Assembly: GCF_964188315.1 (NCBI RefSeq)
Contig: NC_135661.1
Coordinates: forward strand, 58,528,001 to 58,592,000
Direction: 5' to 3'
DNA: 64,000 nt
From: Podarcis muralis
Taxonomy: Eukaryota
Below the pieces are notes generated by a model that worked only from the letters and a program-made list of their open reading frames with translations, was not told where the DNA came from and made no database searches. Position numbers and translations under genes: made by a program. Below are positions 12,750-15,700 of this stretch, piece by piece; position 1 is the first letter of the stretch; every line of letters begins with the position of its first letter.

Positions 12750-15700
12750 ATGAATTCCCAGGTGCAGCAGAACTACCACGTGGACTGTGAGGCTGCTGTT
12801 AACCACATGGTGAACCTGGAGCTCCATGCCAGTTACGTCTATCTTTCCATGGTACCTGCTTGCTTTTTCATCTCTCTTGCGCTTTGAGGGAGCATCACCA
12901 GAGAGAAGCCCCTTTGCCTTATGCATGTCAAGTGGCCTCATGTGTGCCGTTGCAGGGGGCTGAGAGTTGTGTCACCCAAGTATGTTTTAACTGAATATTT
13001 CATGGGGCTGGTGCCAAAAGCATCACTCAACAGTGGCTGGTGCTTGGTGGGGTGGAAAGCAGGGAGGTCAGCAGCAGGTGGCGCTAGAGTGAATGTCAAG
13101 CAAAGCCAACAAACACTAGTTTTGTCCCTACCCTTCTCCTCCCTGTTGAATTCTACAAGGGCAAGAGTGAGACCAAGGAGGAGGAGGAGGAAGCTGGCAA
13201 GCAGTGGAACCCTGGACTGGTTCCACGTCAGAAGCCAGGAAGGTGTGGGTAGTCTGAGAGCAGACTGAAGTTGGCGTGGCAGTGCTGCATTCACCCCCAT
13301 GGACCAGATTCCACTGGCATGACAGCTGGTTGGACCTGGTCACACAGGAAGGCACAGAAAAGAGTCTGCAGACAGGCCGTGATTACCTGGAGCAACAAAG
13401 ATATCTGAAATCAGGGCCACTGTAGTCATCATGCAGCTACCCTCTCACTGGCATTGCCTGTAAGCACATGGTGGCTGGGGGAATGTTGGTGTTGGCCCTG
13501 CCTGAAATCCAAACACTGTTTCTCCCATGAATCATATTTGCAACTCCCAGCATTTTAAGCAAAGCTACTGTTGGTCCCTGGTATGGCAATTAGTGTCCCC
13601 TATTTCCTGTCACGGGTCAGGTCAAAGTGTAAAGGCTGAGGCATTTTCCTGGGCTGCTTTAGCATAACAGCCTTGTTAACAACAAGGTGCATCATAATAA
13701 AGACTGAACAGTTTTGCCAATATTGACATTGATTTATAATTCTTAAGATTTTAAGAAACCGGCTGGAATTGTCAGAAAATTCTAACACTTGCCAATGGAG
13801 TGTTCTCAGTGAATGGTCAAATTTCATGCTCCCTTCCATGTTTTAGCAGCAAAGAATTAAGAAAGCCGCCAGGCACCTTTGCCTAAACCTGATCCACAGA
13901 TGGTTGAAACAGCAGCTAAATTGCTGCATAGTCCGCTTAATGGATGACTGGACTTTTCTGTTTTTCTCCCCCTCCCTGACCTCAGTCCTACTACTTCAGC
14001 CGTGATGATGTTGCCCTCAAGCATGTAGCTACATTCTTGAAAGAGGAATCACTCAAGAAGAGGGGATATGCAGAGATGTTTTTGAAATACCAGAACAAGC
14101 GAGGGGGGTGCATCATTCTTCATGACATTCAGGTGTGTGGTGTCTGCTTTCTTGATTAAAGTGGCCAGCAATTGAGGCAAACTAGTCCATTCCCTGTGGT
14201 GCCACAGTCAGGGCATCCGCCTCTGTTTGGTTTACCAGTGTCAGGATGTCTATCTATATGCTTGTATATTTTATTTTACATATTTTGCTTTTTAAAATTA
14301 AAAAAATAGTCTTTTCACATGGAATAAACATACTTTAAAATACAATAAACTCAAACAGTATCAGCAAATCTCTTGTTCCTTGGAAAAAGGTGTAACAGCA
14401 GCTTGAAGCTGGAACCACTACTTAGAACCCATTCATAATGTATTTTAAAGACTCTAATCCACTAGGCCTTTCCAGATGTTTCTGTGGGGCTGGGCAGGTT
14501 GTCTTGACTGATGGTCACATCTCAAATGGGAGATGGATGGATTCTATATGTTGTAGAAGGATGAGGAACTTATCTTGCCTTTGTCCTGGTTACAGGCTAC
14601 ACCTGAGCACATACCACAAGTCTATTGTCAGGCCTGTTGCAGAGCACCAAAATTTAGCTATTTCTAAATGAGTGGCTACCAGCAACAGTGCCAACATCAC
14701 CCAATGAGATAAATGTTGATTTGATTAATTTATTATTCCTAGCAAGGCTAACAAAGGCGTTGGATTTATACTACAGATTAATCTGATTTCTTCAAAGACT
14801 GCTGACCAAAAGCAGAACACCTTGTCACGGCACCACCAAATATGGATGATGTCTATCTATATGCTTGTTGATACTCCCAAAGAACTCTGATAGGAAATTA
14901 GGGCAAGGCCTGTCTTGCTAACCCAATTCTTCTTCGGCCTCTCCTTAACAGAAGCCGGAGCAGGATGAGTGGCAGTCCAGCCTTGAAGCCTTCCAGAGTG
15001 CCCTGCGGCTGGAAGGAAAGGTGAACCAAGGTCTCCTGGACTTACACAAGCTGGCTCTGGAGAAGGAGGATCCTCATGTATGTCACCTGTGGTTAGTGAG
15101 CAAAATTAAAATGGGTAGACATTTGGGGAGAATGGAGGACCCTGAAAAGGCACTTAAAAGCTCATTCTAGTCACCTGGTGCCCTCTGGATTTTTGGAGTA
15201 CAACTTCCACCAGCCTCCAGCTAGCATTGCCATGCAAGTCTGGGCTGATGGGAGTTGCAGCCGAAACCAACTGAAGGGCACCGGGTGGGGGAAGGCTACA
15301 CTAGAATCTCTAAACAAAACATGTAGACCAGGAGCTGGCCCAACATTCATAGACAGGCAGCCCCCTTGGAAAGACCATTTCATATTCTCAAATATTGGCT
15401 TGAGCCAATGACAGCTCAGGCAGAAGCCTTTCCCAGCCACACTATGATAATACACAAGGTCACTTTCATGAGTGAACTTGGGCCCTGGGCCCTTGAGCCT
15501 TTTAAAGCAGGTGCTTCACCCCTGAGCTATGAGCCCTCTGCTCACAGCGCTCGTCTTATCTAGTATCAAAGCCTTTGAGCATTCAAAAATCTCCTTTTTT
15601 TCTGAGCTAGCAGATCCCAGATGTGATGAGGATGATCTGGGTTGGGACTCACCACCAGTGACTGTTTCAAAAGGAAAAGGAAGCGCAAGCCCTGAGCAAT

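What the first reader, a model, noticed from the sequence alone, without database searches (positions are those of the whole stretch)
14040..14075. Ferroxidase centre and nucleation site of this ferritin are dismantled
In human H numbering, E27, Y34, E107, E140 and Q141 are kept, but helix B reads E-E-S-L-K-K-R-G-Y at 57-65: E61K, E62K, E64G, H65Y. E62K with loss of H65 is the classic ferroxidase-null combination, and K62 with E107 recreates the stabilising L-chain salt bridge. Unlike a true L chain, it keeps only one of the four nucleation glutamates (57, 60, 61, 64). It is therefore predicted to neither oxidise nor mineralise iron and to present a basic patch (KKR) to the cavity, which could favour anionic cargo.
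Basis: partly seen in the sequence, partly recalled or inferred. Interest (0 to 1): 0.85.

Follow-up and report, generated by a model that had tools for sequence, protein, structure and literature searches.

The report
Iron-inert ferritin subunit conserved across lizards
This wall-lizard gene encodes an intact, expressed ferritin that has lost the residues for letting in, oxidising and seeding iron, and lizards and geckos have kept it in that state under selection, so it is a new non-catalytic vertebrate ferritin subunit and not a broken gene or an assembly error.

Summary
Window 14040-14075 (+) encodes [12 protein letters not shown] in exon 2 of an intact four-exon ferritin gene (12750-15890, 176 aa). 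The protein is identical to RefSeq XP_028594974.2, "ferritin heavy chain A-like", of Podarcis muralis. In human H numbering it carries E61K, E62K, E64G and H65Y, plus D131H and E134K in the three-fold pore.

These are not private variants. All five lacertids examined share them. A strongly supported clade (100/98) from five major squamate lineages shares K61, K62 and K134. Five of the six orthologue loci fetched lie between ZBTB8A and ZBTB8OS. Pairwise dN/dS is 0.15-0.25. A related species expresses a correctly spliced mRNA. None of the genes has an iron-responsive element, while the canonical lizard H-type gene and a frog M-type gene do.

The gene is best read as a selectively maintained, catalytically inert ferritin subunit outside IRP control. 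It is functionally comparable to the L chain, FTHL17 and invertebrate "atypical" ferritins, but it also lacks the nucleation site and the pore carboxylates.

K62 probably points into the helix bundle, R63 is near-universal, and the protein stays acidic. The same scan noted the gene and its pore on this window; I found no paper on it. Biochemistry is untested.

The parts
12750..12851 (+). Exon 1 coding part (34 aa, [10 protein letters not shown]...YLSM), with a GT donor at 12852
   Evidence: A spliced RNA contig joins 12850/51 to 13985/86. The 102-nt exon is the same in six squamates.
12627..12749 (+). Transcribed 5' leader (at least 123 nt). It has no iron-responsive element and contains a short upstream ORF at 12647-12706.
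   Evidence: The X6 spliced contig starts at 12627. Rfam finds no IRE in 11000-13000 at E<=10, nor anywhere in the window. No C-bulge/CAGUGN hairpin lies within 1.5 kb upstream. The upstream ORF was read from the sequence.
13986..14132 (+). Exon 2 (49 aa, 147 nt), encoding the end of helix A, the loop and helix B
   Evidence: with AG/GT boundaries. Pfam PF00210 hit. Closest solved match is frog M ferritin.
14040..14075 (+). The reported stretch: codons for K56-E67, carrying E61K, E62K, E64G and H65Y
   Evidence: The K61 and K62 codons are AAG in five of six squamates; Tiliqua has TGT (Cys) at 62.
14952..15077 (+). Exon 3 (42 aa, 126 nt), encoding helix C with E107 retained
   Evidence: Junctions 14132->14952 and 15077->15735 are seen in RNA.
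15611..15661 (+). Alternative terminal coding exon inside intron 3 ([16 protein letters not shown]). RefSeq models use it for 141-aa isoforms in P. raffonei and L. agilis.
   Evidence: The exon-3-to-15611 junction was not among the junctions listed in the RNA laid here.
15735..15890 (+). Exon 4 (51 aa plus TGA), encoding helices D and E. It holds LCHFLKS, the altered three-fold-pore motif, together with Y137F and Y168H.
15735..15755 (+). Codons L129-S135. The 'twin carboxylate' LCDFXEX motif is replaced by LCHFLKS (D131H, E134K).
   Evidence: Motif definition and the effect of D131N are from PMC13088775.
15947..15952 (+). AATAAA polyadenylation signal
   Evidence: RNA contigs end at 15976-15986.

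Best explanation
This is the Podarcis muralis copy of a single-copy ferritin gene that five of the six squamate families examined carry between ZBTB8A and ZBTB8OS.

Shown here. The subunit keeps the ferritin fold and its four-exon gene structure. It is under purifying selection and is transcribed and correctly spliced. It belongs to a clade defined by E61K, E62K, E134K, Y137F and Y168H. It has no iron-responsive element.

Inferred from mutagenesis of other ferritins.
- With Lys at 62 and no His at 65, the di-iron ferroxidase site cannot form.
- With L60, K61 and G64, the inner-surface nucleation site is gone.
- With K134 (and H131 in lacertids), the three-fold pore that normally attracts Fe2+ is neutral to positive.
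The subunit alone should therefore neither take up, oxidise nor seed iron at useful rates.

Most likely mode of action (inference). It is a catalytically inert cage subunit, made independently of cellular iron status. Either it co-assembles with the active, IRE-controlled H-type chain and reduces the number of active sites and cation-attracting pores per cage, or it forms iron-poor cages of its own. K61, K62 and K134 are invariant or nearly so, while positions 64, 65 and 131 drift. This suggests the lysines themselves are selected, and that the state is more than a relaxed, half-decayed one.
For: Gene model and residues.

Identity to XP_028594974.2.

Fold: AF2 model with pLDDT 90.3 and TM 0.94-0.95 to human H and frog M ferritin.

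Clade: ten squamate sequences from Gekkota, Scincidae, Lacertidae, Anguidae and Iguania are monophyletic at 100/98.

Fixed differences against 102 relatives with an intact centre: E61K 11/11, E62K 10/11, E134K 10/11, Y137F 11/11, Y168H 11/11. Positions 64, 65 and 131 vary.

Synteny: BTB-zinc-finger gene, ferritin, Archease gene (minus strand), RBBP4-like gene in Podarcis, Zootoca and Sceloporus; the first three in Paroedura and Tiliqua.

Gene structure: the same exon structure in six species.

Selection: pairwise dN/dS 0.15-0.25, including 0.22 for the close pair Podarcis-Zootoca.

Expression: a spliced contig of exons 1-2-3 at depth 176 and an exon 3-4 junction at depth 52 in a related species.

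IRE: none in the window or in five other orthologue loci. The same tool finds strong IREs in the canonical Zootoca H-type gene (50.8 bits) and in a frog M-type gene (54.5 bits).

Literature: E62K is sufficient to abolish ferroxidase activity (PMC7760355). E62K/H65G is used as the null control (PMC4029007). D131N abolishes rapid Fe2+ uptake, and LCDFXEX is described as strictly conserved in cytosolic animal ferritins (PMC13088775). E60/E61/E64 form the nucleation site and E61 is critical (PMC12022971).
Against: No biochemistry exists for this protein. 24-mer assembly, co-assembly and iron handling are all inferred.

E27, Y34, E107, E140 and Q141 are still conserved, which could mean some metal binding persists.

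Expression in P. muralis itself is weak in the runs laid. The contigs are low-depth and partly unspliced, and there were no reads in the sampled 12% of one 2026 RNA-seq run. The strong spliced signal comes from a related species of unknown tissue, and the run types are only labelled 'RNA?'.

dS exceeds 1 for the deepest pairs, so those dN/dS ratios are rough.

Lack of an IRE is shared with the other sauropsid M-like paralogues sampled, so it is not specific to this clade.

No snake member was seen, so the gene is not shown to be universal in squamates.
Confidence: 0.6

Rival explanations
1. It is a functional equivalent of an L chain. It has no ferroxidase activity but still promotes slow iron mineralisation and cage stability in heteropolymers, using the remaining inner carboxylates (E57, E58, E67, E140) and the K62-E107 pair.
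For: K62 and E107 are both present and E107 is invariant. E58 is fixed 11/11 and E67 11/11 in the clade, and E140 or D140 is kept. The subunit remains acidic overall.
Against: The three L-chain nucleation ligands E60/E61/E64 (PMC12022971) are L/K/G here, and K61 is invariant in the clade. K134 removes the pore carboxylate that L chains keep. Squamates already have a separate L-like chain with E60, E61, K62 and E64 (P0198 and P0199, about 52% identical). Position 57 is K or A in five of the eleven genera examined.
Confidence: 0.17
2. It has left iron storage altogether and serves another role. One option is an FTHL17-like regulatory or nuclear function in particular cell types. Another is a cage whose charge-inverted pores and K61 patch admit or hold anions, which is the reader's 'anionic cargo' idea.
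For: The Glu-to-Lys charge reversals at 61, 62 and 134 are invariant or nearly so, whereas neighbouring former ligand positions drift. There is no IRE. R22, which I know as the H-chain residue needed for NCOA4 binding, is H/Q/C/N/D in the clade. FTHL17 is a precedent for a ferroxidase-dead ferritin with partly nuclear location and a role in supplying Fe2+ (PMC7760355, PMC13149808).
Against: No localisation, partner or cargo data exist. The protein is still net acidic. K62 probably lies inside the bundle and R63 is ancestral. Nothing in the sequence resembles a targeting signal (read directly).
Confidence: 0.18
3. It is a decaying or non-functional gene copy, or the odd codons are errors or private alleles of one assembly.
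For: Former ligand positions 64, 65 and 131 vary between lineages. Some transcripts retain intron 3, use a frameshifting donor, or end in an alternative exon.
Against: The ORF is intact, with GT-AG introns in five of six species and a GC donor on Elgaria intron 1. dN/dS is 0.15-0.25. The clade spans five major squamate lineages. The helix B sequence is identical in six lacertid records and in a contig from a separate run.
Confidence: 0.03

Closest known systems
Frog/fish M-type (H') ferritin, e.g. bullfrog M ferritin 1MFR / 1BG7
   Same: It is the closest solved relative: about 62-64% identity over 171-174 residues, the same 176-aa length, and TM 0.94. The lizard gene nests inside the tetrapod M-like group in the tree.
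   Different: M ferritin has the full ferroxidase centre, E57/E61/E64, the D131/E134 pore, and an IRE (the frog gene scores 54.5 bits). The lizard protein has none of these.
Mammalian ferritin L chain (FTL)
   Same: It has no ferroxidase centre. K62 sits opposite E107, and position 65 is not His.
   Different: The L chain keeps E57/E60/E61/E64 and D131/E134 and is IRE-regulated (IRE regulation is from my knowledge). The lizard protein lost them. It is not in the L lineage, being only about 52% identical to squamate L-like chains, which served as outgroup.
FTHL17 (mammalian X-linked ferritin-heavy-like 17)
   Same: It is an H-derived ferritin made ferroxidase-dead by E62K, with a presumed non-storage role (PMC7760355, PMC13149808).
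   Different: FTHL17 keeps the other centre residues and has E61D (PMC7760355). It is a mammalian X-linked family. The lizard gene has four exons, sits at ZBTB8A-ZBTB8OS and is squamate-specific, so the origins are independent. I could not verify the FTHL17 pore residues here.
Invertebrate 'atypical' ferritins (e.g. sponge HdF2: E27Q, E61S, E62K, H65S, E134A)
   Same: They combine loss of ferroxidase ligands with loss of a pore carboxylate and usually lack an IRE. Their function is unknown (PMC8395497).
   Different: They are unrelated lineages with much lower identity to H ferritin. The lizard clade has charge reversals to Lys, not loss to small or neutral residues, and keeps 60% identity to human H.
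Engineered human H mutant E62K/H65G ('222')
   Same: It carries the same two-site disruption of the ferroxidase centre and is used as the null control (PMC4029007).
   Different: It is a laboratory construct that keeps E61, E64, D131 and E134. The lizard protein is a natural, long-conserved form with additional changes.

Membership tests
Eukaryotic 24-mer ferritin (Pfam PF00210) | Four-helix bundle plus a short fifth helix, with a Pfam Ferritin match | tested here: met
   Exon 2 reaches the Pfam cut-off for PF00210 and exon 4 matches it below cut-off; the whole protein carries the precomputed domain. The AF2 model has pLDDT 90.3 with helices at 11-38, 46-72, 93-120, 124-154 and 161-171, and TM 0.95 to human H ferritin.
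Eukaryotic 24-mer ferritin (Pfam PF00210) | Assembly into a 24-subunit cage | not testable with these tools
   Only a monomer model is available, without coordinates. This needs SEC or cryo-EM.
Vertebrate cytosolic ferritin gene | Four exons with phase-0 introns (102/147/126-nt coding exons) | tested here: met
   The junctions are confirmed in RNA.
H-type (catalytic) ferritin, as the RefSeq name 'heavy chain A-like' implies | Ferroxidase ligands E27, E62, H65, E107, Q141 (plus Y34) | tested here: not met
   E62K and H65Y; the other four are present.
H-type / cytosolic animal ferritin | Twin-carboxylate LCDFXEX motif of the three-fold pore | tested here: not met
   The motif reads LCHFLKS. K134 is found in 10 of 11 genera of the clade. 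The motif definition is from PMC13088775.
IRP/IRE-regulated ferritin mRNA | IRE hairpin in the 5' leader | tested here: not met
   There is no Rfam IRE_I match in the window or in the 10 kb upstream held for five orthologues, and no manual CAGUGN hairpin. Positive controls score 50.8 and 54.5 bits.
L-type ferritin | No ferroxidase centre, with K62 opposite E107 | tested here: met
   K62 and E107 are present. The salt bridge itself was not measured.
L-type ferritin | Nucleation glutamates E57/E60/E61/E64 | tested here: not met
   Only E57 remains. Positions 60, 61 and 64 are L, K and G.
L-type ferritin | Descent from the L lineage | tested here: not met
   The protein nests in the M-like group. 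Squamate L-like chains are about 52% identical and served as outgroup.
M-type (H') ferritin of lower vertebrates | Phylogenetic placement in the M-like group | tested here: met
   It lies inside the sauropsid plus amphibian M-like group, with a node at 100/99 for the sauropsid set.
M-type (H') ferritin of lower vertebrates | Both a ferroxidase centre and a nucleation site | tested here: not met
   Both are lost.
FTHL17 family | Mammalian X-linked ferritin-heavy-like genes | tested here: not met
   This is a squamate gene with three introns in an autosomal-type ZBTB8A-ZBTB8OS-RBBP4 context. The resemblance is functional only.

The most novel reading that the evidence does not exclude
Squamates have evolved a third functional class of vertebrate ferritin subunit. 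In it, Glu-to-Lys charge reversals at the pore (134), the cavity face (61) and the former catalytic site (62) have been positively maintained since the gecko-lizard split, which I place at roughly 200 million years ago from my own knowledge. The resulting cage, or cage component, excludes Fe2+ and either gates iron entry into mixed cages independently of IRP control or carries a non-iron (anionic) ligand. That would make it a vertebrate counterpart of the unexplained invertebrate 'atypical' ferritins.
Probability: 0.2. Interest if true: 0.8.

Novelty: new variant of a known kind. Interest (0 to 1): 0.55.

Why it matters
Ferritin teaching rests on two vertebrate subunit types: H, which oxidises iron, and L, which nucleates it. 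A pore motif is described as strictly conserved in cytosolic animal ferritins.

Here is a natural vertebrate subunit, long conserved and under purifying selection, that lacks the oxidation site, the nucleation site and the pore carboxylates all at once, and that escapes IRP control.

It offers a ready-made natural experiment on what a ferritin cage is for when it cannot handle iron by itself. It is also a possible vertebrate handle on the 'atypical ferritins' whose function is unknown.

On the practical side, the RefSeq names 'ferritin heavy chain A-like/B-like' mislead about function. The reptile M-like ferritin family, with several parallel losses of the centre, deserves re-annotation.

Tried and rejected
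1. Exon-by-reference searching. The spliced protein had no reference at first. I searched exon 2 alone against the representative library, which led to the gecko orthologue P0002 and then to P0219, identical to the window protein. The 50%-identity representatives themselves were mostly fragments and of little use.

2. Tandem paralogues in the window. tblastn found none.

3. Rejected: the gene is in RefSeq as XP_028594974.2.

4. Pseudogene or assembly error. Rejected (see the rival explanations).

5. 'Basic ferritin'. Rejected: net charge is -3 and pI 6.35, and the clade ranges from -1 to -10.

6. Ancestral locus. I looked for ZBTB8A or Archease next to the crocodilian, turtle and frog relatives and next to the second Podarcis paralogue. 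None lies within 10 kb. The turtle and frog genes sit in tandem ferritin arrays. A stem-squamate transposed duplicate is therefore likely, but it is not proven with 10-kb flanks.

7. Snake orthologue. The snake proteins returned (Python, Notechis, Erythrolamprus, Liasis) all have EE/H and fall outside the K61/K62 group; Python and Notechis, the two in the tree, sit in the other squamate clade. Absence in snakes was not tested at DNA level.

8. Tissue of expression. Run metadata are coded, so the tissue could not be determined.

9. Literature. No paper combining ferritin, lizard and ferroxidase deals with this gene. The Ruzzenenti 2015 FTHL17 paper is not held.

10. Lerista P0006 is a mis-predicted model with a 62-residue intronic insertion, which I cut out by hand before using it in the tree.
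Full report
**1. What is at the coordinates**

Window 14040-14075 on the + strand reads AAA GAG GAA TCA CTC AAG AAG AGG GGA TAT GCA GAG, which translates to [12 protein letters not shown]. It lies in frame in the second exon of a four-exon gene:
- exon 1 coding part, 12750-12851
- exon 2, 13986-14132
- exon 3, 14952-15077
- exon 4, 15735-15890, with TGA as its last three bases

All introns are GT-AG, and an AATAAA signal lies at 15947-15952. The product is 176 aa. There is only one ferritin copy in the window.

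The protein aligns without gaps to human H chain. Query residues 2-174 match chain residues 6-178 counting the initiator Met, so lizard residue i corresponds to residue i+3 in the usual H numbering. In addition, exon 4 reads LCHFLKS, giving D131H and E134K, with Y137F and Y168H.

**2. Whose gene it is, and whether the codons are real**

The window is identical to Podarcis muralis assembly GCA_964188315.1, OZ076960.1. The protein is 100% identical to RefSeq XP_028594974.2, "ferritin heavy chain A-like". The gene is therefore annotated, but it is named as a heavy chain.

Several independent records support the codons:
- The older P. muralis RefSeq version, P. lilfordi, P. raffonei, Lacerta agilis and Zootoca vivipara all read [12 protein letters not shown] and LCHFLKS.
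- A contig from a separate 2017 run, labelled RNA, of the same species covers exon 2 exactly with no differences.

**3. Expression**

In a run from a closely related species, one contig of depth 176 joins exons 1, 2 and 3 exactly at the predicted GT-AG sites. The exon 3-4 junction is seen at depth 52, against intron depths of about 3-10.

In P. muralis itself the runs I laid show only low-depth contigs that break at exon boundaries, plus a form with intron 3 retained. One 2026 RNA-seq run, of which about 12% was read, had no reads on the gene. Tissue labels are coded, so where the gene is expressed remains unknown.

**4. Relatives**

The closest solved structures are bullfrog ferritins (1BG7, and M ferritin 1MFR) at about 62-64% identity; human H is about 60%. 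An AlphaFold2 model has pLDDT 90.3 and a TM-score of 0.94-0.95 to these structures, with the canonical A-E helices.

Searching exon 2 alone led to a gecko protein with the same [11 protein letters not shown]. Profile and single-sequence searches then gave orthologues from:
- Gekkota: Paroedura, Heteronotia, Euleptes
- Scincidae: Tiliqua, Lerista
- Lacertidae
- Anguidae: Elgaria
- Iguania: Phrynosoma, Sceloporus, Anolis sagrei

In a maximum-likelihood tree of 70 sequences, these ten form one clade with support 100/98 and a stem of 0.16 changes per site. The clade sits inside a sauropsid M-like group (100/99) that also holds tuatara, turtle and crocodilian genes, plus a second squamate clade of 24 sequences, mostly with an intact centre. 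A third lineage of canonical 177-aa H-type chains lies outside. The order of lineages within the sauropsid group is unresolved.

**5. Orthology by position**

In Podarcis, Zootoca and Sceloporus the gene lies between a BTB-zinc-finger gene (ZBTB8A-like) and an Archease gene on the opposite strand (ZBTB8OS-like), followed by an RBBP4-like gene. Paroedura and Tiliqua show the first three. The window adds a BTB exon at 3507-4601 and a syncoilin-like filament ORF at 43039-44100.

The crocodilian, turtle and frog relatives, and the second Podarcis paralogue, have no such neighbours within 10 kb. The turtle and frog genes sit in tandem ferritin arrays. A DNA-level duplicate that moved to this interval in stem squamates is the simplest reading, but 10-kb flanks cannot prove it. 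No snake member was recovered; snake genomes were not examined at DNA level.

**6. Selection**

I extracted exact coding sequences from six loci. All share the 102/147/126/150-165-nt exon plan. Pairwise dN/dS is 0.15-0.25 by both methods for most pairs, including 0.22-0.25 for the shallow pair Podarcis-Zootoca. The deepest pairs have dS above 1 and are rough.

I compared eleven genera of the clade with 102 relatives that keep the full centre.

| Position (H numbering) | Clade | Relatives with intact centre |
|---|---|---|
| 61 | K 11/11 | E 102/102 |
| 62 | K 10/11 | E 102/102 |
| 134 | K 10/11 | E 101/102 |
| 137 | F 11/11 | Y 94/102, F 8/102 |
| 168 | H 11/11 | Y 101/102 |
| 153 | S 9/11 | T 97/102 |
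| 58 | E 11/11 | Q 73/102 |
| 60 | L 10/11 | H 64/102 |

The former ligand positions 64 (G/E/A), 65 (Y/D/N/Q) and 131 (D/H/N) drift. The three Glu-to-Lys changes are each a single GAG-to-AAG step. The pattern is not uniform decay: the lysines are held while the neighbouring ex-ligands are free.

**7. Regulation**

Rfam finds no iron-responsive element in the window, even at E<=10 in 11000-13000, nor in the 10 kb upstream held for the Paroedura, Zootoca, Elgaria, Sceloporus and Tiliqua orthologues. A manual search for C-bulge/CAGUGN hairpins also fails.

The same tool finds IRE_I at 50.8 bits upstream of the canonical Zootoca H-type gene and at 54.5 bits upstream of a frog M-like gene. The turtle, crocodilian and second Podarcis paralogues also lack an IRE. 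Loss of the IRE may therefore predate this clade.

**8. Mechanism**

This section is inference, based on established ferritin biochemistry.
- The ferroxidase ligands are E27, E62, H65, E107 and Q141, with Y34 (PMC7557750).
- E62K alone is reported as sufficient to abolish activity in FTHL17 (PMC7760355). E62K/H65G is the standard null (PMC4029007).
- The L-chain nucleation cluster is held by E60, E61 and E64. In mitochondrial ferritin, E61 is critical and E64 contributes (PMC12022971). Here these positions are L, K and G.
- The LCDFXEX twin-carboxylate motif of the three-fold pore is described as strictly conserved in cytosolic animal ferritins, and D131N abolishes rapid Fe2+ uptake in human H (PMC13088775). 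Here it reads LCHFLKS.

The subunit should therefore be inert for uptake, oxidation and nucleation. It is made without IRP control, and it keeps a confident ferritin fold. I commit to this reading at confidence about 0.6: a selectively maintained inert cage subunit that either dilutes active sites and cation-attracting pores in mixed cages or forms iron-poor cages.

The rivals are:
- an L-like slow mineraliser using E57/E58/E67/E140 (0.17)
- a role outside iron storage, FTHL17-like or anion-related (0.18)
- decay or artefact (0.03)

**9.

From helix periodicity and known structures (my knowledge), residue 62 faces the bundle interior, opposite E107 as in L chains. R63 is ancestral, being present in 93 of 102 relatives. 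The subunit is still acidic, with net charge -3 and pI 6.35, against -5 to -11 in active relatives.

The real new inward positive charges are K61 and the pore K134 (plus H131 in lacertids). 'Anionic cargo' remains a speculation that this evidence does not exclude.

**10. Comparison with known kinds, and novelty**

Dead ferritin subunits are known: the L chain, FTHL17 and invertebrate atypical ferritins, which also tend to lack an IRE (PMC8395497). This one differs in four ways. It combines loss of the centre, the nucleation site and both pore carboxylates. The changes are charge reversals that are themselves conserved. It is a vertebrate, intron-containing, single-copy gene at a fixed locus. 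And it coexists with a separate L-like chain.

I found no paper on it in the searched library. I class it as a new variant of a known kind, with interest about 0.55.

Earlier notes of this scan on the same window (s1-172983 for the gene, s1-172996 for the pore) agree with what I found. One correction applies: the gene is not hidden, since it is in RefSeq.

**11. Caveats**
- The run types are only labelled 'RNA?' and the tissue is unknown.
- The tree backbone is a polytomy.
- The Lerista sequence was hand-trimmed of an intronic insertion.
- The Elgaria flanks were uninformative.
- The K62-E107 distance, cage assembly and all iron chemistry are untested.

Noticed in passing
Proteins P0166/P0260, P0241, P0268/P0281, P0280, P0294, P0261, P0237/P0236, P0302: Other reptile M-like ferritin paralogues have lost ferroxidase ligands independently. 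Crocodilians carry E62H/H65Q. One tuatara copy has E27K/E62K/H65N. Phrynocephalus has E27K/Y34F/E62K. A Zootoca copy has E62K/H65D/Q141E. Some turtle copies have E62Q. Dead ferritin subunits appear to have arisen repeatedly in sauropsids.
   Followed up: partly
L004 (Gopherus), L012 (Chelydra), L011 (Pyxicephalus): The turtle and frog M-like ferritins lie in tandem arrays of three or more genes within 20-50 kb. The frog gene has a strong IRE (54.5 bits), whereas the turtle arrays, the gharial gene (L003) and the second Podarcis paralogue (L005) show none. The sauropsid M-like family may have lost IRP control as a whole.
   Followed up: partly
window 15078-15091 and 15735: In the related species' RNA, an alternative donor 14 nt downstream of the exon 3 donor is used at depth 21, against 52 for the canonical junction. 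It would shift the frame of exon 4.
   Followed up: no
window 15611-15661: An alternative terminal exon lies inside intron 3 ([16 protein letters not shown]). It underlies the RefSeq 141-aa isoforms in P. raffonei and L. agilis, which would lack helices D and E. A same-species contig from a run labelled RNA also runs unspliced from 14949 to 15986, retaining intron 3.
   Followed up: partly
window 12647-12706: A short upstream ORF (19 codons plus stop) lies in the transcribed 5' leader, upstream of the ferritin ATG. A Lacerta agilis RefSeq isoform (X2) starts in this region and splices to exon 2.
   Followed up: no
window 20339-20397 (+); L006 17068-17126 and 2841-2899: There are partial tRNA-like matches (31-34 bits, model positions 8-63). 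The window match and one Zootoca match lie inside the ZBTB8OS-like gene span; the other Zootoca match lies in the ZBTB8A-like gene span. They are probably tRNA-derived SINE fragments.
   Followed up: no
window residues 79 and 176 of the protein (codons in exon 2 and exon 4): The two P. muralis RefSeq versions differ at IILHDI versus IILQDI and at the last residue (N versus S). The other lacertids have Q and S, so the window carries derived alleles at these two sites.
   Followed up: no
window 3507-4601 (+), 8137-8751 (+), 43039-44100 (-): Neighbouring genes are a ZBTB8A-like BTB exon and last exon, and a syncoilin-like intermediate-filament ORF. Together with the Archease and RBBP4-like genes, the gene order matches what I recall of human 1p35, which has no ferritin gene in this interval as far as I know (not tested).
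   Followed up: partly
L007 10102 (Elgaria exon 1 donor): The Elgaria orthologue uses a GC rather than GT donor for intron 1, and its gene is stretched to 7.6 kb by a 5-kb intron 2.
   Followed up: no
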